Source: Thalia democratica (Eukaryota). Taken from it: 64,000 nucleotides of DNA. Shown here piece after piece: positions 20,583-57,408 of this stretch (position 1 is the first letter of the stretch; every line of letters starts with the position of its first letter). The notes beneath the pieces are model-generated. The model did not search any database. It was not told the DNA's origin and was given only the letters and a program-made list of their open reading frames with translations. Made by a program: the position numbers and the translations under genes. The stretch is taken from positions 1 to 64,000 of the forward strand of contig CBDBBG010000062.1 of NCBI GenBank assembly GCA_965202585.1. Direction: 5' to 3'.

Positions 20583-22127
20583 CGGTAGGACTTTTTATGG
20601 GTAGTATTTTATCGGTAGAATTGCTGCAATCAATTCTGCCTATAATTTGACGTGATTAATTAAAATTATGGGTAGTATTTAGATGTTGCTGCAATAAAGT
20701 TGCTGCAATTAAATGAAAAAAAAAAAACATAAGCCTTATATAGAAATTATGGATAGTTTTTTTTTTTAATTTATATCAAACAAATAAAAAATAACTTGAA
20801 TACACATAAACCAATGGTTTGGTTTATTTGTAAATTTATTTAAATTATACTTTGTAAATTAACAGAAGTAGTGGCTAAACTTATTGAAAAATTATGGAAA
20901 GTTTTTTTTATGTAATATTTAGTAAAGAAAACAACTTGAATATACTTAACCAATTGTTTGATTTAACAGTATATTTATGTAATTTAAATTTACAGAAGTA
21001 ATGGCTTTGCTTTAATAATATTTTGGACATTTGTTTTATTTAAGATTTTATAAACAAAAAAAAATCAAAATTTATCACACTTAAACCAATTGCTTGATTT
21101 GTAGTTGTATATATGTAATTTATATTTAGTAAACTCATAGAAGTAGTGGTTTGGCATTATGTGTACTATTTTACGGGCACTATTTTATGTGTAGAATTGC
21201 TTTAATTAATTGTGTTTATGTTTTTTCTAGCCAATACTTCTGTTAGTTTAAAAAATATAATTTAAATAAATGTTCAAATAAATCAAACCATTGGTTTATG
21301 TGTATTCAAATTATTTTTTAATTGTTTCTTTATAAATTTTAAAACAAAAAAAAAATATCTATAATATTTATTTAAGGCCTAGACAGTTTTTATTTTTCAT
21401 TTAATTGCAGCAACATCTAAATACTACCCATAATTTAAATGAAATCACATCAAATTATGGGCATAATTTATTGAAGCAATTCTACACATAAAATACTGCC
21501 CATAATAAAGTACTCATAAGGCCAAACCACTACTTCTATAAGCTTACTAAATATAAATTACATATATATGACTATAAAACAAACAATTGGTTTATGAGTG
21601 TTCAATTTTAATTTTTTTTTGTTTATAAAATCTTAAATAAAGAGAATATCCAAAATATTTATAATATGCCAAGCCATTACTTCTGTTAGTATAAAAAATA
21701 TAGTTTACATATATATAATTTTAAATCAAACTATTAGTCTAAGTGTATTCAAGTTGTTTTCTTTATTAAATAATACATAAAAAAAACACTATTTTTGATT
21801 TTTCAAAATGTCTAGCAGCTACTTCTGTTAGTTTACAAAGTATAATTTAAATAAATGTACAAATAAATCAGACTATTGGTTTATGTGTATTCAAGTTATT
21901 TTTTATTTGTTTGTTTATAAATTTTAAAACAAAAAAACTATTTAAAATATGTATATAAGGCCTAGACAATTTTATTTTTCATTTAATTGCAGCAACTTAA
22001 TTGCAGCAACATCTAAATACTACCCATAATTTTAATGACATCATATCAAACTAAGGGCAGAATTGATTGAAGAAATTCTACCCATAAAATAGTGCCCATA
22101 AAATACTAACCATAAAAAGACCTACCC
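20583..22127. mobile_element. Non-autonomous Mutator-like (MULE/foldback) element with very long TIRs
   Basis: Ends CGGTAGGAC.../...GACCTACCC; perfect 9-bp TSD AAAACCTTA (20574-20582 and 22128-22136). Arms of ~600 bp are mutually reverse-complementary and built of internal ~125-bp subrepeats. Confidence 0.92.
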
Positions 22128-23307
22128 AAAACCTTAAAAGTTCTTAGTTACGTCATGGTGCACACAAACTTGCTGTATGACGTAATATTCTATGACGTCA
22201 CACAAAATTGTTTAAAAGTACAAACGCTTGCTGTGCACAAACTTCATATTTTTTTATTCGTTAATTTATTTGTTAAAAGTTTTCTTTCTAAAAAAAAAAA
22301 TGTACATCACATGAAGAATTTTAGAAAAACGTTTAAATGGGCTATAAAGAATTAGTAAAAAGTTTCTTTTTAGTTTTATTTATAGACATACACATATGTA
22401 TAAATACATTTTATTGTAAAATAAAATCAGTAACAAATTTTAATTCCATAAACAGTGCATCTTAAAATTATATCAATGATATAAGTAAATATAGTAAATA
22501 TTATGAAATTATTCAAACCATATTTTTGTTAAATAATTAATTTTGAATAATAAAGTCCTTATTTGAAGCATATCTTGATAACTCATTAAAACTATTTAAC
22601 TCTTCTTTTATCAAATCAATATTTTTTTTATATTAACTCCTTACCGAATAATTTTTTACACAATAAAAATTCAACCATTTTGTTTTCAAAAAAAAGTAAA
22701 CGTTAAATCCTTTCATACAAACTAATAACATGTACCCCACTTAAAAGCTGAACTTAATTCACATATTACTTGTTACAAAAAGGAAATTTAAATAAACTAA
22801 AAAACAACTTATACACATGACTTTTAAAACATCCTTTCAACAAAAAAAACGATCTGAAATTTTCACTTTTGTGCATCAACATCAAGTTAAGAATCTTTTT
22901 TGGGGGCTTGAATGAAAAGCTCCAATTTGTTTTGCATTTGGCGCTCTTTTCTCATTTCTTCAACTGAACTTTCTTACCGACTATCAGTTCCGTCTTCATC
23001 TCACTGTTCTTTGACATTTCCTCCAAAACATCTTTCCCTTCAACATTGTTTAATTAATATTACTTTCTAATGAAAAAGAATAATTAATTAAGTATATCTT
23101 AAACTGATATGTAAAAATAAAACTACAAGTTTTTGGAAAAGTTTAGTTTAGATATTGGTAGTTTGTTGCTTAAGACATTTAAAACACTTCAATGAAACAA
23201 AAAATTGTTTAAAAAATAACAAACCTGGTTTTCGAGTCTTTGCGATTCGCTGTTGCTGAGTTTTTACTGAGCAATTGCAAAGTTATATCAAAAAAGATAT
23301 AAAATTT

Positions 23308-23990
23308 AAAATAGAGTATGGTGTTGGTTTTGCTGTCAAGAATACACTTTTACAACTTGTAGAAGTCGGTGACGGAAACGAACGTATTGCTACTCTACGT
23401 TTACACACCAAAAAAGGAACAGCGACCCTTATTAGTGTATATGCGCATACGCTATACACTGACGAGCAAATTAAAGATACTTTTTATGAAAAGTTGAATC
23501 TCGTAGTGAATAAATTGCCAATAAACGACCAACTTGTTATTCTGGGTGATTTTAATGCAAGAGTTGGATCTGATCACGACTCCTGGGCTCCCTGTCTAGG
23601 ACATTTTGGTTTTGGAAGAATGAATTCTAATGGTCAACGCCTTTTAGAGTTTTGTCATAAACAGAACCTCTGTGTTACCAATTTATTTTTTAAAACTAAA
23701 TGGCAGCATAAAGTATCTTAGAGACATCCCCGTTCTAAAAACTGGCACCAATTAGACCTTATCTTAGTGAGACGCCATCGTATTAACGATGTTCTGTTAA
23801 CTAGATCATATCAAAGTGCAGACTGTAACAGCGATCATTCTTTGGTCTGCTGTAAAATGCACATCTCAAAAAAGTTCATGCATAATTCAAACAATTTAGC
23901 TCGTAAAGTTCGACTAAATGTAGGTGCAATGCGGGACAAGGAAAATCTAAATCAATATAATCTAAAATGCAAACAGCTTGGACAAGATAT
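23308..23990 (+). mobile_element. RTE-clade non-LTR retrotransposon fragment, APE endonuclease domain (pseudogenised)
   Basis: Motifs YGVGFAV, LISVYA, LVILGDFNARVG, NGQRLLEFC, KVS*RHPRSK..QLDLILV and ADCNSDHSL are typical of RTE/BovB-type endonucleases. In-frame TAG at 23719-23721 where W is expected. Confidence 0.92.
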
Positions 23991-24509
23991 TGTGAATCGG
24001 TTTGCAGAAGTACATAATCACACGGATCCTGATACAATAGAACCCAAACATAAAAGTATGGTAATACAAATAATAATGAATACCGAAAGTCTACTAGAAA
24101 AATATCAGATTCATAAATCCAACGTACTTGAAAAATGACGAGGAGAAATTGGGAGAAAAACAATTCTAAAAACAATGCGAATGAAATATCAAATGCAAAA
24201 GTAACAAAGTTATTCAAGTCTTTATTCAAGACAAGTTAAAATTGAAACACGTCAAGGTTATGGCATCAACTAACTTGTATTAAGCATTTTTGCAATGATG
24301 AAGGATAAAATTTTTTAAGTATGTAGGGAAACCCAGTTTGATTGAAAATTTCGATTTATTAATAACTCTTTTTGAGGTTGAATTAGACAAATAAAAATTT
24401 GATAAAGAAAACTATTTTGATTTTTTTGAAAGGTTTAAAAATCAAATTAATAAAAAAATAACCTCTCTAAAAATGAAATTCAAGGAAACATCTGGGTATT
24501 TTGTGGTCG

Positions 24510-24990
24510 TCCACAAGTTTTTTTACAAACATAATTTTCTGTTCAAGTAGCTATATCGGGCAAAGTTAAAGAAATTTAAAAACACGTGTCAAGGAGTATC
24601 AAAATGTATTCAATTGAACATAATAAATATAATTAATAAAAAGAAATAAGCTGTGATGCTGTGTGCTTGATTAGTTTTTTATAGTGAAAGTTTCCAACCT
24701 ATTTAACAAGGACCAAGTAAGTGCCCTATATATTTAAGACTACCATATTTAGAACAAGAAACAACAGCTCTTAAATAGAATGTCAAAAGCACAGTTAACT
24801 CTACTTTTAGATCTGAACAAATAAGAATTAGTCATTTTACAAGAAAACCTTTGAATGGATTTTGTAAGGATGTCACTACCGATCTAGAAAAAAGTTAAGT
24901 CATTTCTAAGTTCAAATGCCACTGTGATCGTGTGTATACCGGCAGAACGTCCCGGAGATTTCACCTTAAAAGGGACCAACGCAGCTGCAG
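24510..24990 (+). mobile_element. Penelope-like element relics (GIY-YIG endonuclease fragments)
   Basis: CSSSYIGQS*RNLKTRVKE (~24540-24600) and KFKCHCDRVYTGRTSRRFHLKRDQ (~24905-24980) match the PLE GIY-YIG pattern YKFxCxxCxxxYIGxTxRxLxxRxxEH. Confidence 0.7.
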
Positions 24991-25912
24991 AGAAGCTTGA
25001 AGGAAAAACTTTTTTAAAGAACATTATAAGGGCGGGTTACAATTAAAAGGTCCCTGCTAATACCCCTCTGAATCGAATTGAGAGATTCTTTAGGTTTAAC
25101 AATAACAAAGTGATGTTTGCTCAGAATCATCTAAAAATAACAAAGTAATGTTTGCAAAAGTAATGGCAAAAATCGTAACAAACACTATTTGCCTTGTTTC
25201 ATAAGAACTCTTGCCGTGTTATAAATGCCTTTGACTCGCTTGTGGACAAGAATGCTGCTGTATTCAGATAAAAATCGCCAAACTAAGTATTCTTTAATCA
25301 AGTAGTGCAACAGTATACTTTTTGTAATTAAATTTATTTTTTGTAAGGTTTATTTATATTCAAAATTAAGTAACAAAGTTTAACAATTATTTTCTTATGT
25401 TAATAATTTGCAGAAGGAGGTATTATCAAAAAAATTAATATTTTATTATCAACACAAGATGAAATAAAACTTCTATTAATATTGAAAAGCAATATTCCAC
25501 AATTGAATTTTAATATTGTCAGATCTCCTTGCAAAGCCATGGGATTTTGTTGCCAGAATTTTCCATTTACTGAAAGCATGATAGAGGAGGTTGGAAAGAC
25601 TAGCCTCTATAAAGACATAAATTATAATGTTCAAGAAAAATTGTCAATGGCAGAGTTCAAGCTTTTTCTACCCGCAAATGTTTTTAAAGTAAATCAATGG
25701 GTTTATATGTATTTCATTATTATGTAGAGCAGTTTTACTAGGCAATTTAGTGTTAGCTTTTGTTACAATGCAGTTTAACAAGCAATATTTTAAGTAAAGC
25801 AAAATTTATTTTCATACATTTTCATTTTGTTATAGCTGTTTTAATGGCTAACATTTTAGATATTGTTTAAGAATGTATTTTAGTTTAAAAGTTGGTATGT
25901 TTTAAAAGTTAA

Positions 25913-26808
25913 TTACAACAAATAAAGCATCTAAAAGTGAAGAAGAACATGAAAACAAGATTTAAAGAAGCTTTCCCCGAAGAAATTAAATACAGAGCAA
26001 GAGCTTTCTTTGCATTTCAAAAAAAAGATGGCAAGGAAATTTGCTTTTTCGGACTTCACTCTCAAGAGTACAAAGACTGCGGATCGCCAAACAACAACAG
26101 AGTCTACATAGGCTACCTGGACTCCGTTAAAATAATTAATGATCGGATACGCTCCGAGGTTTACATGGAGCTTATACTTGGATATTTTGAATACTGCGGC
26201 AGACTAGGATACCGTTTTGGGCATATATGGTCGTGTCCTCCAAAGAAAGGTGACGATTACTTGTTTAACATTACCGAGCTAAAAGGTACCAGATCAACAA
26301 AGGCTTAACTTCTGGTACAAAAAAGGGTTGGAACAAGGAGAAAATCGTGGCTTGATAAAAGGATATCAAGAGCAGAATGATGAAATCTGTTCGGTCACAG
26401 AACATCCATACTTTGAAAGAGATCTCTGGACGGATATGATGGAAAAAGTTTTGGATCAAAAGATACCAAAAAGAAGAACAACAATAAATTCATCAAAAAA
26501 TACACAGTATGACGTCACTCAGAACAAAATTGTGTTAAGTAAGGCACGTCAGTATCTCAAAACCACAAAACAGAACAACTTCGTTGTCATACTTAACAAT
26601 GACGGAGCACGAAGAATAGACACTGATCCTGAAGTTGACATTGACTTGATGGACACGAGAATTCCTTAAATTGTGTCAAAAACAAGATTGGAAATTTTCA
26701 AGTCCGCAGGAAGCGACTGTTTCCACACAGCACATGCTGATTGAACTTTACAAAAAGTTTAACGTAGATCAAGAAAAGCCTAAGTGTTTTGAAAACTTGC
26801 TTGAATAG
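25913..26808 (+). pseudogene. Intronless p300/CBP-like (KAT11) histone acetyltransferase catalytic domain, two frameshifts
   Basis: Translation across frameshifts (~26280 and ~26660): KVKKNMKTRF..IKYRARAFFAFQKKDGKEICFFGLHSQEY..NNNRVYIGYLDSV..IRSEVYMELILGYFEY..GHIWSCPPKKGDDYLF / KVPDQQRLNFWYKK..HPYFERDLW..NNFVVIL..DPEVDIDLMDTR / FLKLCQKQDWKFSS..STQHMLIELY. This is colinear with the p300 HAT domain (FFGMHVQEY, RVYISYLDSV, HIWACPP..GDDYIF, WYKK, PYFEGDFW, DLMDGR..FL, EFSS..ST..MLVELH). Confidence 0.93.
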
Positions 26809-27163
26809 TTTTTACTTATTTAAACTTTAAGTTATTTTAACTGTTCTTGCTTAAGAAGAACGCAACACAACAGAAATATTTTCAACAGAACAAGCCACTA
26901 TGAACCGATACAGCATTGTCTGATGGAACTTGGTACAAATAAATTGGTTAAGCTGGTGAACTACGCCTGAAAACTGATGAAATATATTAGAAAACAACGA
27001 ATTAAAGTTACTTTATTTATTCAAATAAGTTTAAAAATAAGTCCGGTTTTTTACGCTGTTTAAACAAATATATATTTAGATTAAGTTACATTTGATGTTA
27101 ACATTTCAACCTTAAACGGTTTCTGTTCTTTCAACGCTAGTGAAAAATTATTTAATGAATATA

Positions 27164-27299
27164 TGCATTATTTGCCGTGAAAATTTTAATGCTATACAAG
27201 CACAGTTATGAAACTAAGCTGTTATCATATTTTTTGTCAAAGTTGCATCTGAGGTGATTTATATGTAATTCATATTGTCCTCAATGTAATGAACGTTTA
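27164..27299 (+). pseudogene. C3HC4 RING finger relic (frameshifted)
   Basis: CIICRENF.. / ..LSCYHIFCQSCI* / ..SYCPQCNERL gives C-x2-C..C-x-H-x2-C-x2-C..C-x2-C spacing after allowing two frameshifts and a stop. Confidence 0.72.
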
Positions 27300-27779
27300 T
27301 AAATAACTTATTATTTAGGAATCCCTTTTTTTGTAGAAAAATGTTAGAGAAAAAATACAGCAAAGAGTGCGAACAAACAGTTCTGAAGATTTTAGCAGTC
27401 AGAATGCAGGACTTTAAAATTTATAATGGCACTAACAGATAGAATTTAACAAGTTTCTCTTCACAAGGCGTGATATACAAGTGGCAAAAAGTGTAAGAAC
27501 ACATTTTGACTACAGTTGAATTCAATCTGTATATAACATTTTTTTTACAAAGAGATCCGGCCCACTGCAAACAATCTTGTCCACTTTGAAAATGGAGTCA
27601 AATTATAAAATAAAAAATGGTTTTTAAAAAATGACAAAAGTAATTCAACTTATGTTTTAAAATATAAAATCATTAGAACACCAAAAAATAAGTGACGCCT
27701 GTAGTGAAAAAAAATTTCTGAAAAACTTTAAAAATCCAGGTTAACTATAATTTTGATTTAACCAAATTAAAGTTTTCAA

Positions 27780-28070
27780 CTTTTTGACAATAAAAGTTGT
27801 CCCATAAGTTGTATCTATCAAGCGATCGTCGCCTGGAGACTTCAGGAATTTTTTTAGTTGCTTCATATTTATTAAAACTATAAACAAACAAGTTTGACTC
27901 TCACTCGCTCACAAAAAGAAAATTGCAAGAAGTCAATAACTTTCTTTTACATAGTTGAATACGTGGATGAAAAATCAATTAACTTGAACCACAAGGCCCA
28001 CTAAGAGGTTAACGCAGTGCATTTAGTTCCGTTAAAAAACTTGCTGTATAAAAACCGAATAACGGTCCAA
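27780..28070 (+). repeat. Copy of a dispersed degenerate coding-like module (also at 30380-30570, 36859-37350, 37459-37798 and reverse at ~45010-45060)
   Basis: Shared text GTTTGACTCTCACTCGCTCACAAAAAGAAAATTGCAAGAAGTCAATAAC and TACATAGTTGAA..GTGGATGAA.AATCAA. Confidence 0.85.
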
Positions 28071-29289
28071 AATAGAGAATGTACAAGATCATTTAGAATA
28101 GTTTTAAGTGTGGAAAAATACTAAATTTACACAAATTTGAAAACAATTATTTGTTTTTAAAAAGGTGGGAAAGGGAAAAGAATTTGGTGTCGTATTCAAA
28201 AATATTAGTGCCATTGACCACAATAATCAATAAACATTGTAATAAAAGTAAAATTTATAACTTTCTCTTGACACAGACCAAAAAACTATAAAAAGAAAAA
28301 GAAGTAAAAAACATGTACATTCATTAACATGTGAGTAAAATATATAAAAATGACCTGAAAAAACAGCATGTTTGAAATTAAAATTCTAAGCATTAACTTT
28401 TACTATTTAAACTTACAATGATTTTAGTTAAATAATTATGATATTAACCCATAAAAGTAAGGTAGCAGTTTCTAAACTCATTATGCCTATAAAATCAATT
28501 ATTCAAAGGCTTACAAGTACAAAAATAAATCATTTCGCAATAGGGCAGAAATTATTGAATCCGAATTTATTCAAACAAAAGAAAAGAGCGACTCTAGGAG
28601 ATTATGATCATAATAAAGTTTAAGTAATAGCTGAAGTAACTCATAGAAAAAAGAAAAGGGCGACCAAGACAATTCTGAAACATTAGGAGAAAATGATTAT
28701 AATTTAGCCAAGAATTACTTGATAAAACTCCTAAAGAGAAAAATTTGAGTGAAAAAGTTAGACGACCACTAACTAGAAATTTGCATAAAAAAAACCATTT
28801 ATGGATTCACAAAACAAAAGCATTGAAAAAAATATCAGTATGGATGGCTCCAAAAACTTGATTTTAAGAAAATAAGATGTTTTTTGGTGAGGAAAAGGCG
28901 TGCAAAGCATATTTAGCGGACTCAGATAACTAACTAGACAATTCTGATAAGGAAATATTATTACCAGTGTTTGGTGAAAGTTCGTTGCGTGGCAGGTAGT
29001 TTTTTATTTAACTGTTAACATATTTAAAATTAAACAACATATGTATTTGTTAATCACCAATCATAAAGTTTAGGAACAAAAGTCATGAAATTAAAAACAA
29101 GTTTCAAAAGTCTTTTTTGACAAAGAGACCTGAATACGACGTTACTTTATCTATTAAAGAGATTTTAAAGTCTAGAAATTAGAAAACATTGAAATTCGAA
29201 TGAAAAACAACTTCAAAATATTTTGCAGCGGCTGATATACATTAAGTTACTTGTCATTAGAATTTTAAATGAAAACTTACATTTTGTTT

Positions 29290-29650
29290 TCGAGACAATG
29301 TTCATTTTTTTGGTGCCTCAACCTCTTAGAAAACCAAACATATTATGTCAAAGTCAGCAGTTTTGAAATTTTTGTACTTAAAATTCTGATTGTTAATAAA
29401 TCATTGGTTATTTAATGATTTAGTAGCATATAATCAAACATAACTTTGTATTTAAATAACGTTTTTAATAGTTTTAGTATACAGCTATTTTTAGGATGTG
29501 GAGAACAGAATAGAAACGTAAAAACCAAGTAAGCTTTTAGCTTTTTACTTTTTAAATAAAACCATAGTTGATAAAATAAAAATTATACCATTAGGTCGAT
29601 GTTGATGAATTAGAAACTGAAAAAAAAATAGAGTGAAGCCGATTGTAAGT
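29290..29650 (+). repeat. Module with an inverted homologue at 46300-46670
   Basis: GACAATGTTCATTTTTTTGGTGCCTCAACCTC and CAAACATAACTTTGTATTTAAATAACGTT..GTGGAGAACAGA..GTAAGCTTTTAG match the reverse complement of 46300-46670. Confidence 0.85.
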
Positions 29651-30024
29651 TTAAAATATTGTATTTACATATAAAGTAAGTCCACAATAATTTTTTTAGT
29701 GGGAACCGAACACAGCAAAATACATAGAAAAACAGTTCCAAAATTTTTTAGTATTTCAAGTTGTCTTCTAAAAATAATAGTATTATATCAACAAAACCAC
29801 AGTTGGAATATATTTGGGAGTATTGTAATGATGATCCTTGAAGAAAAACTTCGGTCAGAAGCTATACCGGAGAAATAATGAGTATTGAAATCGAAGACAT
29901 GTTATCCCTCAACCCAAGAAACGTAAGAAGGTGCTCTTGGCTCAATGTTATTTAAAATAAGAAATCAAAATAATTAATGAGAAAGTGGTTAGAAAGATAA
30001 AACATAGAATTGATAAAATTTATT

Positions 30025-30122
30025 ATGAAGTTTTTAGACACTGACGGAGCAGCTACAATGACAGGCGTTAAAAATAGTTTTAGAAAACTATTAAGAAAAG
30101 AAAGCTCTAGGCTCATTTCGTA
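30025..30122 (+). mobile_element. hAT transposase catalytic-core fragment
   Basis: MKFLDTDGAATMTGVKNSFRKLLRKESSRLIS matches the hAT DGAxxMxGxxNGxxxxL motif. An inverted homologue lies at 47604-47890. Confidence 0.75.
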
Positions 30123-30797
30123 CTCTCAAGAGAGAGTGTACAAGAGATGATATGGTTTTAATAACAAATGATATTTTATCTTAGTGCAAATGTTCAGATT
30201 CAAATGTAAATTGTTAACATTTCACAGTTTATTTAACTAAATAAGTTTCTTTTTATTTTATTTTTAAACAAAGATAATTCGAGGATATTTGTTATTACCT
30301 TTGAATACGACAAAGTAAAAAGTGTAAAATATATCTGTCACAACCGTCTTAAGATGCATCAAAAGGGAATATAAGTAGAAAATTGCAATAAGTCAATAAC
30401 CATAACAATAAAACGAAAAGGAGAAAGACTTTACCTTTTTACATAGTTGAAAATGTGGATGAATAATCAACTGATTCTAATCACAAGATCACGGATAGGT
30501 TGACTCAGATCATTTAGTCCAGTTAAAAACTTGTTGCACAAAAAACGAATAATAATAAAGCTCATGAGACAAATACAATGGCATGTAGAGATTAGCTTAA
30601 CAAATTATTATGCAAATCTTACTAAGCAGACAAAGAGACACAGCAAGGACCGTGATTGATAAAAAAGTGATTTATTTTTAGGTAACCAACTAAAATACTT
30701 TACATAGGCAATTGAAAAAAGATGTGAACTAAAAAATGATTAGCAAAAAATCAATAGTGGAGTAAAATTGATTTTTTTTGTCCACTATTTGTAATAT

Positions 30798-31082: not shown

Positions 31083-32002
31083 ATGCAGCAACAAAAATTT
31101 ATTAACCTAAAAGCACATGGGTATTTGATAGGGAATGGGAAAAATCCTACAGTCTACTACAAAAAATACGTCATGAATTTCAACCTGCTGATCACGAGAA
31201 TAGAAGCTACAACGACTCGAAACAAAAGTCATTCTGGGTTAATCACTTCGAACAGGCAAAGAAGGATTCAAAGTGGACCGACAACGCGCTGAAGTGCTTT
31301 GTGTACAAAGAAAAAGAAGGGTTCATGAATCTCACGTTTAAAGACGTATATTCATTGGTGTGCGAGTACGGATGGTTGTCGGACAGCGTTATAACGGCGG
31401 TAATCAATAATGTTGTTAAAGAAGGAGAGTTGGGATTCATTGAAGTGAGCATTCTCAAGGCGTTGGAAAATCCTCATTTAACTAGTACCACTCCCACACC
31501 TTTCAAAGAAAAAGACGGATACATTGCTGTGAAAAACGTCGGTGGGAACCACTGGATATTAGTTTACTTCAATAATCAAACCATGTACGTTTTGGATCCT
31601 GTGAACAAGGAGTGTCGGCTTGCTCCAAGCAACTTCTCGAGGCCTTCAAAACGAACCACCACAACGAGAAAAACGCTAGCCAACAATCGACCAAGTGGAA
31701 TTTCAAAAGCGGCGAGTGGAAAGTTAAGACGATCTATCACACCCCTCAAAAAGACACTTCAACTGCGGGGTTCTATGTTTAGAGTACGCGTTGCAGATAC
31801 ACACTATTTTTCCCATCATTCCTGAGGAAGTAATAAACCTGAGGTCAGCCGGCAATTGTTCATGAGCAGTTTGCTGAGGAGCACCGGACTGTATGTGAAA
31901 GAAGAGAGTTCGGATAGCAAGTCGTATAGCATTCCAAAGTTTGTTATACAAGTTAGTGACTCTGAAAATGATAGTGATTCAGATTCTGAAAAGTCGGAAT
32001 AA
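31083..32002 (+). pseudogene. Ulp1/SENP-like (peptidase C48) SUMO-protease pseudogene, at least 3 frameshifts
   Basis: LTFKDVYSL..GWLSDSVI, KNVGGNHWILV..MYVLDP, then via frameshifts TPQKDT(F)NCGVLCLEY and an acidic tail SDSENDSDSDSEKSE* (TAA 32000-32002). The catalytic His/Asp/Cys and the oxyanion Gln are all present. Confidence 0.85.
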
Positions 32003-32339: not shown

Positions 32340-33786
32340 ATTCCAGTGTTTGTATTAACAGTTTTATAAAACGAAAAAGCATTTATATCTTCAACTCATT
32401 TAAAAGCGCAGCTGCAGAGAAGCTTGAAGGAAAAACTTTTTTAAAGAACATTATAAGGGCGGGTAACAATTAAAAGGTCTCTGCTAATACCCCTCTGAAT
32501 CAAATTGAGAGATTCTTTAGGTTTAACAATAATGTTTGCTCTAAATCATCTAACAATAACAAAGTAATCTTTGCAAAAGTTACAGAATTTTATGAATATT
32601 TAATAGGAAATTTAAGAAGTTTTTAATGATGAAACATTTGATGGATGAAGCATCAAATAGCTCAATTAAATTCTACTAATTTAAGTTAAATTACAAAACA
32701 GATGAGATAGAATATTATTTATTGAATTCTTAGTCGATATCAACTATTACTACATCCTTGGTAGAGAAGTACATTTTTGGAGTAGGCTTCAGAGTCCTTA
32801 ATATCAGAACATTTAGTTAAAAATCCAATATGCGGAAAAAGTTGAAATGAAAATCAAAATGCCAAGAATTTGTAACAATACTTTTGCCCTGGTCAAAATT
32901 GAAGCCATCTACATCAATATTCAAACAAACAAAAATGTAAGCAGAAAGAATTTTATTATTGTTTTAAAGATGAAAGAAGTTTTGTTTGTATAATAACTTT
33001 TATTAAGCTTGTTTAGTTTCGCTGGAGGGGAAAAGGGACATGGCAATACTTGAGCTTCTTATACAAAAATATAGAGAATCTTTGGCGCGTAGAGGTCTGT
33101 CTAGCAAAGTTGCTTATGTTGGAAAATCTATTCAGCAGGAAGCCAAGCAAAAAGGTAAATTTAGTATGGCAAATGTTAGGAGTTGAAAAAATTTAAGTGA
33201 ATGTTTATGAACTACCAAGAATGTTTATTGATTAAAGTCAATCACCTTAGTGTGCCCGGTCAAGGGATGTAACGTCCTTGTTGGAAAGGTTCAATTAATA
33301 AAGTATTGAGTTATCAAGAACGTGACAGTGAAATCAACAAAACGCCAATAAGAATAGTAAAACAAGATTTGGTTGCAGTGACAGCGGTAAAATTTTTCAA
33401 GAATTTCTGCGCTCCGCACTTTTTTTTTCTAATAATTTGTTGAAAATAGATCACAGTAATTTAGTGAACACCGATAAAGCTTCAATCGATATACTAGAAT
33501 GTTATTAAAAAAAATCATTTAACAAAAGTTTGAATATCAATTCCCACCAGATACACTTAAACGGATGCAAGGATAATTTTTTAGATTTCCGAGGTTTTCA
33601 GGAAGGTCCCTTCCACACGAACGAAGGCAAACTGGATCAAACTTTTGGGCCGCATGTCATAGTTTATATATGTTGCATTTACAACTCGAGTACACAAATA
33701 CGGTGCAAAACAAATAATAATGAAATTAAAGGTAATATTTGGATATTTTGTGGTCCTCCACATGTTTATAAGTATCATTTACAACA
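32340..33786 (+). repeat. ~1.45-kb module, inverted copy at 40716-42180; partial copies at 24985-25150 and 63500-63660
   Basis: Long colinear near-identical text, e.g. GCAGAGAAGCTTGAAGGAAAAACTTTTTTAAAGAACATTATAA, GCTGGAGGGGAAAAGGGACATGGCAATACTTGAG and GGTTGCAGTGACAGCGGTAAAAATTTTTCAAG, read as the reverse complement in 40.7-42.2 kb. Confidence 0.95.
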
Positions 33787-45409: not shown

Positions 45410-46010
45410 TTATTTACTAAATGTTCTGCAAAAGACAAACATTTTTGAAGCATTTAAAACTGTTATATCATCATTCTTTTCTGAAGAGCAAATGTTTTTT
45501 TACTGTTGTAAATGCAAGAAACATCCACGAGTAAAATCAGGAAAAATAGATTGTACTGCATTTAAGGCAGCTTTCTCGAAATCAGTTATTTACAGTCGTG
45601 GTTTAAGCGACTTTATTCTGTTTAACGTAGTGAAAAATCTGGTGTACGTTATTTTGAAGTAAAGCGTACACTAAATTGAATACAGCAGGTTTTTCATCTA
45701 AACTGGTTTCCATGATTTCTTCATGTATGGTAAACAGCTGGTGGAAATGCCTTGTTGGTGCAGTACAAAATGTACCATCAGATATAAATTTTTTGCCCCT
45801 AGCAAGCAAATCAAGGTTTTCTGAGTTGAAAAAATAATTAACCTCAGAGCCTCTACTTCATTTACAGAATGATGCAGAAGAAAGTTGGTACCGTCGTCTA
45901 ACCTAGTTAGATATTCCGGCAATATCAATTCTTGCAAGTTGGTTGGAAACAGGAACAACATTTCCAGTTTTTCTTCTTGCTTATTTGTTTTAATGCATCT
46001 CTGTTTGGTA
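45410..46010 (-). mobile_element. MULE (Mutator-like) transposase pseudogene fragment
   Basis: LILPEYLTRLDDGTNFLL..RLIIFST / FISDGTFCTAPTRHFHQLFTIH..VYALL / ITDFEKAALNAVQSIFPDF.RGCFLHLQQ. These carry the MULE DGTF, DFExA and GCxFH motifs, with frameshifts. Confidence 0.9.
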
Positions 46011-57130: not shown

Positions 57131-57408
57131 CCTGCGTTTTTTTTCTTCATCATAAATTCTAGAATATCTGGTGTAATTTTCAAATTGTATTTTAATTTTT
57201 CCCCTTTTGTGGTGTGGAAAGTTCTGGCGAAAGGATATCCGGCGAGCGTCAAGATTCCGTGAAGCAGTGCAGGTGCTGCCCCGGATGTTGCGACGTGTCG
57301 ACCAGCCCCGGATGTCAAGGCACCAGCCACTGCGCCACCGACGGACAAGTCGGAAGGCTGTCGTTCGTGTTCCTGGCGAGCGACAGAACTAGCGCTACTT
57401 TCTCCCAA
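57131..57408 (-). other. GC-rich island / possible isolated exon
   Basis: 57205-57405 is about 60% GC by eye in very AT-rich flanks. The minus frame is open for 278 nt between an AG (57409-57410) and a GT (57129-57130). No recognisable protein motif. Confidence 0.35.

What the first reader, a model, noticed from the sequence alone, without database searches (positions are those of the whole stretch)
25913..26808. Stand-alone, intronless p300/CBP acetyltransferase domain embedded among transposon modules
Seen: ~300 codons align motif by motif to the KAT11 HAT domain. They retain equivalents of p300 D1399 (YLDSV), R1410 (IRSEVY), W1436 (HIWSCPP), W1466/Y1467 (FWYKK) and E1505/D1507 (PYFERDLW). 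The basic autoinhibitory loop looks shortened (~26 aa). The ORF stops right after the HAT domain with no ZZ/TAZ2, and the domain has no introns. Known: animal CBP/p300 genes are large, multi-domain and intron-rich in this region. Inference: this is a highly diverged, processed or captured catalytic module, probably cargo of a mobile element. A TE-borne H3K27/H3K18 acetyltransferase would be a plausible anti-silencing factor, analogous in concept to VANC of plant VANDAL elements. I do not know of a described animal DNA transposon with KAT11 cargo.
Basis: partly seen in the sequence, partly recalled or inferred. Interest (0 to 1): 0.82.

Follow-up and report, generated by a model that had tools for sequence, protein, structure and literature searches.

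The report
Dead fragment of a diverged CBP/p300 acetyltransferase
The window holds a real but broken and incomplete copy of the p300/CBP histone acetyltransferase domain, best read as a recently dead gene fragment in repeat-rich DNA; nothing I could test shows that a transposon carries it.

Summary
The KAT11 homology is real. Three colinear, abutting pieces (25925-26284, 26283-26666, 26656-26805, + strand) match p300/CBP from about K1331 to about 1660. The named catalytic and substrate residues are kept and the autoinhibitory loop is about 34 residues shorter.

It is not an intact stand-alone domain:
- The pieces lie in three reading frames, separated by two frameshifts.
- The first frameshift also occurs in an independent 98.7 % identical metagenome contig.
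- The first ~45 residues of the HAT core were not found.
- Both edges of the homology run into stop codons within 5-10 codons.
- No other CBP domain was detected anywhere in the 64 kb.

The copy is extremely diverged (terminal branch 1.66 against a median of 0.24). Yet it has no in-frame stop in 297 codons, and it keeps 82 % of near-invariant CBP columns against 13 % of variable ones. So it evolved as a working protein for most of its history. It died recently and now drifts neutrally (6 nonsynonymous to 1 synonymous difference).

It sits in a 5.3-kb mosaic block that splits a local repeat, so it probably arrived by insertion. I found no TIR, LTR, TSD, poly(A), linked transposase or extra copies. 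The transposon-cargo and anti-silencing idea is neither supported nor excluded.

The parts
25925..26284 (+). HAT piece A. It corresponds to p300 about K1331-K1456 and holds the YLDSV (D1399), IRSEVY (R1410) and GHIWSCPP (W1436) motifs. It has 120 codons and no stop.
   Evidence: PF08214 at E=3e-27. p300/CBP PDB chains at E about 3e-35. Own CBP profile positions 69-188 at E=3e-53.
26279..26288 (.). Frameshift 1. The homology passes from frame 2 to frame 0 inside the substrate-binding L1 loop, between the Y1446 and K1456 equivalents.
   Evidence: Frame translations and profile coordinates. The same shift and the same downstream stop occur in the independent contig L001 / protein P0001.
26283..26666 (+). 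HAT piece B. It holds the R1462 equivalent, FWYKK (W1466/Y1467), PYFERDLW (E1505/D1507), the shortened autoinhibitory loop, and the C-subdomain up to DLMDTR (D1625). It has 127 codons and no stop.
   Evidence: p300 PDB chains at E=1.3e-7. Profile positions 194-357. Loop length from the alignment.
26655..26662 (.). Frameshift 2. The homology passes from frame 0 to frame 1 at the D1628 equivalent.
   Evidence: Frame translations and profile coordinates 357/358. It is seen only in this assembly, because L001 ends at 26419.
26656..26808 (+). HAT piece C, the last helix (FLKLCQKQDWKFSS...MLIELY). Homology ends near 26780 and a TAG stop lies at 26806-26808.
   Evidence: Profile positions 358-395 at E=0.016. 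CBP in the PDB at E=1.6, at the correct C-terminal position.
25533..25661 (+). Possible vestige of the bromodomain/PHD junction. It contains KAMGFCC followed by a weak PHD-like stretch. The result is inconclusive.
   Evidence: More than 20 CBP queries hit the 7-mer at relative position -167 to -184. A 41-residue match to Macrostomum CBP has E about 0.5. My own CH2 profile gives only 1.8 bits, E=26.
24082..24614 (+). Left half of local repeat X.
   Evidence: It is 80 % identical to 48444-47916 in inverted orientation.
29946..30120 (+). Right half of local repeat X. In the other copy the two halves lie 19 bp apart. Here 5.3 kb (24615-29944), including the HAT piece, lies between them.
   Evidence: It is 85 % identical to 47896-47712.
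26802..26860 (+). A 59-bp sequence starting at the HAT stop. It recurs about 90 bp after the end of the dead Elongin A ORF (51177-51119, minus strand), in the same orientation relative to both ORFs.
   Evidence: The first 22 nt are exact, with 2 matches found against 0.04 expected.

Best explanation
This is a non-functional relic: an internal, intron-free fragment of a strongly diverged CBP/p300-type (KAT11) acetyltransferase gene.

Shown:
- The fragment covers p300 about 1331-1660.
- It is broken by two frameshifts.
- It lacks the first ~45 residues of the HAT core and every other CBP domain.
- It lies inside a 5.3-kb mosaic block that separates the two halves of a local repeat.

Inferred:
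- The lineage that gave rise to it was a working acetyltransferase for most of its divergence from canonical CBP. The reading frame is free of stops, and conservation tracks the functional constraint seen in real CBPs.
- This copy lost function only recently and now drifts neutrally.
- It reached its present place by insertion, through retroposition of an mRNA or DNA-level capture or filler. It did not decay in situ from an old multi-domain gene.
- As it stands it makes no acetyltransferase and does nothing. Its value is as a pointer to a diverged KAT11 gene that exists, or existed, elsewhere in this animal's genome.
For: - The homology and its colinearity are established.
- Two frameshifts are present. 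The first is shared by an independent Illumina-style contig that is 98.7 % identical over 555 bp.
- The window and that contig differ by 6 nonsynonymous and 1 synonymous change, pN/pS 1.4. An omega of 0.1 is rejected at P=0.0035.
- There are 0 stops in 297 homologous codons against 7-12 per piece in the off frames of pieces A and B (2 and 6 in C). The chance of no stop is 1.7e-4, 7.5e-5 and 2e-2 for the three pieces.
- Retention of the CBP consensus is 82 % at columns at least 95 % conserved, 67 % at 80-95 %, 44 % at 50-80 % and 13 % below 50 %. Fisher P=1e-7.
- The terminal branch is 1.66 against a median of 0.24, and the best identity is 40 % over 264 columns.
- 27 of 35 near-invariant columns are kept, fewer than in any of the 62 real CBPs.
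- No other CBP domain is found in the window.
- The N-terminal part of the HAT core is absent.
- The block lies inside repeat X.
- An intron-free, frameshifted Elongin A copy lies 25 kb downstream and a decayed RING finger lies 350 bp downstream. Dead gene pieces are common here.
Against: - The parent gene was not found. The next best relative among 1.84 billion representative proteins is only 57 % identical, and the host genome could not be searched.
- Retrocopy hallmarks (poly(A), target-site duplication) are absent.
- Capture hallmarks (terminal repeats) are absent too. The route of arrival is therefore inferred only from the split repeat, which a rearrangement could also produce.
- The second frameshift is seen in one assembly only.
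- A weak KAMGFCC match upstream hints that more of CBP was once present. That would change 'fragment' into 'decayed larger copy'.
Confidence: 0.7

Rival explanations
1. Mobile-element cargo. The piece would be a dead copy of a transposon-borne (or virus-borne) KAT11 acetyltransferase that once helped the element escape silencing.
For: - It lies inside a 5.3-kb block that splits a local repeat.
- The surroundings are TE fragments and dispersed repeats.
- It has no introns and no other CBP domains.
- It shows long protein-level selection yet has no close cellular relative in the databases.
- A second copy with the same lesion exists elsewhere.
Against: - No TIR, LTR, TSD or poly(A) was found around it or around the block.
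- No transposase or RT lies in the same unit. The LINE endonuclease fragment at 23260-24135 lies just left of the repeat X half, outside the 5.3-kb block.
- There is one copy in the window.
- Only one relative appears in the public protein collections, on a contig at coverage 1.1, while a LINE contig from the same sample has coverage 3.55.
- No relative was found in IMG/VR or JGI metagenomes.
- A survey of TE-chromatin fusions in 172 eukaryotic genomes lists Chromo, PHD, SNF2_N and SET as the main fused domains and names no KAT11 case in its text (10.1101/2021.11.30.470311).
Confidence: 0.12
2. A recent fragment copy of the host's own, single, canonical CBP gene. On this reading the great divergence belongs to the unsampled, fast-evolving host lineage and not to a special paralogue.
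For: - The host is not in the annotated databases. Its LINE has named relatives at only 52-60 % identity, so the host CBP is probably also absent from the searches.
- The tree neighbours are other long-branch animals: Sycon, Panagrellus and myxozoans.
- A possible bromodomain/PHD vestige lies upstream.
Against: - The terminal branch is about twice that of the most diverged real CBPs in the set.
- It keeps fewer near-invariant residues than any of them.
- The regulatory loop is much shortened.
- ZZ and TAZ2, which are highly conserved, do not follow the HAT part.
Confidence: 0.13
3. A live gene. The frame changes would be assembly errors or would be bypassed, and an upstream exon (25566-25688, GTAAAT donor, AG acceptor at 25927) would supply the missing N-terminus.
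For: - No in-frame stops occur within the pieces.
- A canonical donor and an in-phase acceptor exist.
- By eye the upstream ORF resembles helix 1 and strand 1 of the HAT core.
Against: - Frameshift 1 is reproduced in an independent assembly.
- The sequences on either side of each break abut directly, so no intron fits.
- pN/pS is 1.4.
- The upstream exon adds only 2.8 bits, and 49 of 300 shuffles do as well. It ranks 1336th of 2371 ORFs against an N-terminal profile.
Confidence: 0.03

Closest known systems
CBP/p300 (KAT3A/KAT3B) acetyltransferase domain, Pfam PF08214 HAT_KAT11 (for example PDB 3BIY, 5KJ2, 9H02)
   Same: The sequence homology is clear over p300 about 1331-1660. The acetyl-CoA and substrate-binding residues are kept: D1399, R1410, W1436, R1462, W1466/Y1467, E1505/D1507 and D1625.
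   Different: It is broken by two frameshifts and lacks the first ~45 residues. It has no bromodomain, PHD/RING, ZZ, TAZ or KIX. The autoinhibitory loop is about 34 residues shorter. Six near-invariant residues are replaced, including T1411 to S, H1451 to T and G1506 to R. Its branch is far longer than that of any real CBP sampled.
Partial CBP duplicates cbp-2 and cbp-3 of Caenorhabditis elegans
   Same: They are truncated copies of the CBP gene made by partial duplication. They were long classed as pseudogenes (PMC10320766).
   Different: Those copies keep the N-terminal zinc finger and KIX and lack the HAT domain. They lie within 160 kb of cbp-1. Here only the HAT part survives, and no parent gene lies within 64 kb.
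Lineage-specific CBP family expansions (five cbp genes in the planarian Schmidtea mediterranea)
   Same: They show that animal lineages can hold several diverged CBP paralogues (10.1101/2020.09.08.287045).
   Different: Those paralogues are described there as multi-domain genes, with some domains only weakly conserved. The host here is unknown, and flatworm CBPs are not its nearest neighbours in the tree.
Processed pseudogenes (LINE-mediated retrocopies)
   Same: It has no introns, is 5'-truncated, is frameshifted, lies in LINE-rich DNA, and has another intron-free dead gene (Elongin A) nearby.
   Different: No poly(A) tract or target-site duplication is present. The copy ends in the middle of what would be the CBP mRNA and not at its 3' end.
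Chromatin domains captured by transposons (Chromo, PHD, SET fusions); VANC of plant VANDAL elements as an anti-silencing factor
   Same: It would be the same concept if the cargo reading were true (10.1101/2021.11.30.470311). The comparison with VANC is from my general knowledge.
   Different: No fusion to or linkage with a TE protein is shown here. KAT11 is not among the fusion domains named in that survey's text. There is no sequence relation to VANC.

Membership tests
CBP/p300 KAT11 acetyltransferase domain (PF08214) | Significant match to the family profile above the curated cut-off | tested here: met
   96.2 bits against a cut-off of 22.5, E=3e-27, for piece A alone. p300/CBP structure chains match at E about 3e-35.
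CBP/p300 KAT11 acetyltransferase domain (PF08214) | Key residues present: D1399, R1410, W1436, Y1467 (catalytic acid), and the E1505/D1625 pocket | tested here: met
   All of them align. D1628 falls at frameshift 2. The residue roles are from established p300 structural work, recalled from memory.
CBP/p300 KAT11 acetyltransferase domain (PF08214) | A complete domain, including the N-terminal helix and strand (p300 1287-1330; Pfam positions 1-31) | tested here: not met
   The match starts at Pfam position 32 and at position 67-69 of my own profile. The upstream exon candidate is not significant.
CBP/p300 KAT11 acetyltransferase domain (PF08214) | One open reading frame able to encode the domain | tested here: not met
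   Three frames and two frameshifts. The first is confirmed in a second assembly.
Full-length CBP/p300 gene | Flanking TAZ1, KIX, bromodomain, PHD/RING, ZZ and TAZ2 | tested here: not met
   tblastn with more than 60 CBPs and profile searches over all 64 kb found nothing outside 25784-26805 at E up to 1e-3. There is only a weak KAMGFCC vestige.
Transposon cargo gene | Element termini (TIR or LTR) and a target-site duplication enclosing the gene | tested here: not met
   Only short AT-rich chance repeats were found in 24400-30300. The edges of the 5.3-kb block have no TIR or TSD.
Transposon cargo gene | Several dispersed copies that share flanks | tested here: inconclusive
   There is one copy in the window and one 98.7 % identical 555-bp contig elsewhere at coverage 1.1. 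No others appear in the public collections. The host genome could not be searched.
Transposon cargo gene | A transposase or reverse transcriptase in the same unit | tested here: not met
   The nearest TE protein remnant is a LINE endonuclease fragment at 23260-24135, just left of the repeat X half and outside the 5.3-kb block. No Pfam TE domain lies in 24615-29944.
Processed pseudogene | Lacks the introns of the parent gene | tested here: inconclusive
   The ~294 aligned codons (p300 ~1331-1660) are contiguous. Two unrelated eukaryotic CBP genes from metagenomes (L005, L007) have two or more introns in this span. The parent's own structure is unknown.
Processed pseudogene | A 3' poly(A) tract and flanking target-site duplication | tested here: not met
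   No A-run of 6 or more lies within 540 bp downstream, and there is no credible direct repeat.

The most novel reading that the evidence does not exclude
The fragment is a dead copy of a family of mobile-element-borne, HAT-only KAT11 acetyltransferases in a marine animal, with intact copies elsewhere in the genome that acetylate chromatin to counter host silencing. This would be the first transposon with p300/CBP-type cargo.
Probability: 0.1. Interest if true: 0.75.

Novelty: new member of a known kind. Interest (0 to 1): 0.3.

Why it matters
As it stands this is one more dead gene fragment in repeat-rich DNA, which is ordinary.

One feature is unusual. The sequence is more diverged than any CBP/p300 HAT domain sampled, yet it kept its frame and its catalytic residues until recently. 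This animal lineage therefore has, or had, a fast-evolving acetyltransferase of the p300 type with a shortened regulatory loop and no reader or zinc-finger domains attached.

Finding the parent would show which it is: an odd host paralogue, the host's only CBP, or a mobile-element gene. Only the last would be of wide interest.

Tried and rejected
- **Upstream exon supplying the HAT N-terminus (25566-25688 spliced to 25928).** It looked plausible by eye, with a GTAAAT donor and an in-phase AG. It gains only 2.8 bits, 49 of 300 shuffles equal it, and it ranks 1336th of 2371 ORFs. Rejected.
- **Read-through upstream in the same frame.** The profile alignment does not extend.
- **Other CBP domains in the window.** None were found. 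A relaxed search gave only the KAMGFCC vestige.
- **TIRs, LTRs and direct repeats around the piece.** Only AT-rich chance matches.
- **Direct repeats 24980-25161 and 32407-32580 as possible LTRs.** They are pieces of a dispersed ~780-bp repeat with a third, inverted copy and no clear ends in the two full copies (no TG...CA).
- **Poly(A) and TSD of a retrocopy.** None found.
- **ORF 31106-31822 as a Ulp1-like protease.** It looked like one by eye, but there was no Pfam, PDB or database support.
- **A viral origin.** No KAT11 relative was found in IMG/VR with the single sequence or with an alignment.
- **Further copies.** None in JGI metagenomes, and no exact look-up hits for the window's own ORFs.
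- **The shared 22-mer after both dead genes.** Its only metagenome hit is an unrelated contig.
- **Short KAT11 proteins in metagenomes (217-241 aa) as possible stand-alone HATs.** They are exons of full-length CBP genes.
- **Host identity.** Not resolved. The LINE's close relatives occur only in unnamed ENA contigs, one from a TARA Oceans assembly, and in a mis-binned MAG contig.

Full report
**What is there.** The window is 26.7 % G+C with one N run, which I left alone. Between 25925 and 26805 on the + strand, three abutting stretches match the p300/CBP acetyltransferase domain.
- Piece A (25925-26284, frame 2) matches Pfam HAT_KAT11 at E=3e-27. It matches p300 and CBP crystal-structure chains at E about 3e-35 and roughly 55 % identity.
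- Piece B (26283-26666, frame 0) matches p300 at E=1.3e-7.
- Piece C (26656-26805, frame 1) is weak on its own. It scores E=0.016 against a profile I built from 62 CBP/p300 HAT domains and E=1.6 against CBP in the PDB, at the right C-terminal position.
- The pieces fall on profile positions 69-188, 194-357 and 358-395, in order and without DNA between them.

The lysine-rich regulatory loop is about 34 residues shorter than in frog CBP. The observation of KAT11 homology at these coordinates is therefore correct and far beyond chance.

**What is not there.** The homology is not one reading frame. It shifts frame at about 26279-26288, inside the L1 substrate loop, and again at about 26655-26662, at the D1628 equivalent. 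In each case the homologous codons on the two sides abut, so no intron can explain the change.
- The first shift is real. An ENA metagenome contig (L001, 555 bp, coverage 1.1) is 98.7 % identical and carries the same shift and the same stop.
- The first ~45 residues of the HAT core (p300 1287-1330) have no counterpart. Neither the Pfam match, my profile, nor a read-through with X at the stops extends further upstream.
- An upstream exon that looked good by eye fails shuffling and ranking tests.
- No other CBP domain was detected in the 64 kb.
- Homology begins 5 codons after an upstream stop and ends about 10 codons before the TAG. Off-frame and flanking DNA here has a stop about every 11-17 codons, so these limits mark the edges of a fragment and not a designed short gene.

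**History read from the sequence.** The fragment sits within animal-type CBPs on a terminal branch of 1.66 substitutions per site, against a median of 0.24. It has no resolved sister. Its neighbours are other long branches: a calcareous sponge, a nematode and myxozoans.
- The best relative among 1.84 billion representative proteins, apart from L001's product, is 57 % identical over piece A.
- Despite this divergence there is no stop in 297 homologous codons, while the off frames hold 7-12 stops per piece in A and B and 2-6 in C.
- Agreement with the CBP consensus falls stepwise with column conservation: 82 %, 67 %, 44 % and 13 % (Fisher P=1e-7).
- That pattern is the mark of long evolution under the constraints of a working enzyme.
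- By contrast, the window and L001 differ by six nonsynonymous changes and one synonymous change. pN/pS is 1.4 and strong constraint is rejected at P=0.0035.
- The simplest reading is a gene lineage that worked for a long time, and a copy of it that died recently.

**Surroundings.** The HAT piece and its flanks (25162-27783) are unique in the window.
- A local repeat has two halves, 24082-24614 and 29946-30120. In its other, inverted copy (48444-47712) these halves are 19 bp apart. Here 5.3 kb lie between them.
- That block is itself a mosaic of other dispersed repeats plus the unique part. Its edges show no inverted repeat, target duplication or poly(A).
- This argues that the HAT piece came to this place by insertion. 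It does not say by what vehicle.
- A LINE endonuclease fragment lies at 23260-24135.
- A decayed RING finger lies 350 bp downstream on the same strand.
- An Elongin A copy without introns and with at least two frameshifts lies at 52243-51268. Dead gene pieces are therefore common in this stretch.
- The same 59 bp follow both the HAT piece and the Elongin A copy, in the same orientation. I cannot explain this.

**The transposon-cargo idea.** None of the defining features could be shown.
- No termini, no target-site duplication, and no transposase or RT in the unit.
- No second copy in the window.
- No relatives in IMG/VR or JGI metagenomes.
- Only one other copy in the public protein collections, at about 1x coverage, in a sample where a LINE contig of the same host has 3.55x.
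- A survey of TE-chromatin fusions in 172 eukaryotic genomes names Chromo, PHD, SNF2_N and SET as the main fused domains and mentions no KAT11 case in its text.
- The idea is not excluded, because the host genome itself could not be searched. The host appears to be an unannotated, possibly marine animal.

**Comparison with what is known.** Partial CBP duplicates long regarded as pseudogenes are known in C. elegans, although they keep the opposite end of the protein. Several diverged CBP paralogues exist in flatworms. Short KAT11 'proteins' in metagenomes turned out to be exons of ordinary full-length CBP genes. Those genes carry two or more introns in the span that is contiguous here, which fits an RNA-mediated or otherwise intron-free origin but does not prove it.

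**Verdict.** The feature is real: a new member of a known kind (gene fragment or pseudogene of a known family), of modest interest. The open and more interesting question is what the parent was.

Noticed in passing
window 27164-27299 (+): A decayed C3HC4 RING finger lies 350 bp downstream of the HAT piece. Its parts (CIICRENF / LSCYHIFCQSC / CPQCNERL) sit in three frames. Read with X at the breaks, it matches Pfam PF13445 at E=4.4e-7 and PF00097 above its cut-off.
   Followed up: partly
window 52243-51268 (-): An Elongin A-like coding sequence (TFIIS-N/Med26 plus the Elongin_A box) is contiguous, has no introns, and carries at least two frameshifts, one inside a TA repeat. It is probably a processed pseudogene.
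   Followed up: partly
window 26802-26860 (+) and 51177-51119 (-): The same 59 bp (first 22 nt exact) follow both the dead HAT piece and the dead Elongin A copy, in the same orientation relative to each. The window has 2 matches against 0.04 expected. The meaning is unknown.
   Followed up: partly
window 25533-25661 (+): KAMGFCC is identical to the conserved motif at the bromodomain/PHD junction of many CBPs, at a colinear position upstream of the HAT piece, followed by a weak PHD-like stretch. BLAST gives E about 0.5 and my own profile gives E=26. It may be a vestige of a longer CBP copy.
   Followed up: yes
window 23260-24135 (+): A LINE apurinic-endonuclease fragment. Its close relatives (76-98 %) occur only in unnamed ENA contigs, including a TARA Oceans assembly, and in a contig binned as 'Bacteroidota' (GCA_038527955.1). 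That contig is probably host DNA mis-binned into a MAG.
   Followed up: partly
window 20587-22115: A 1.5-kb block of roughly 145-300-bp units repeated in direct and inverted orientation at 65-84 % identity.
   Followed up: no
window 57195-57400: A sharp G+C-rich island in otherwise 27 % G+C DNA. It has no Rfam or Pfam match.
   Followed up: no
window 31106-31822 (+): A 239-codon stop-free stretch with G+C of 0.40-0.44. It has no Pfam, PDB or database relatives. It resembles a Ulp1-type protease by eye only.
   Followed up: partly
window 45606-45857 (-): A weak MULE-transposase-like ORF (PF10551, E=0.08, below the cut-off).
   Followed up: no
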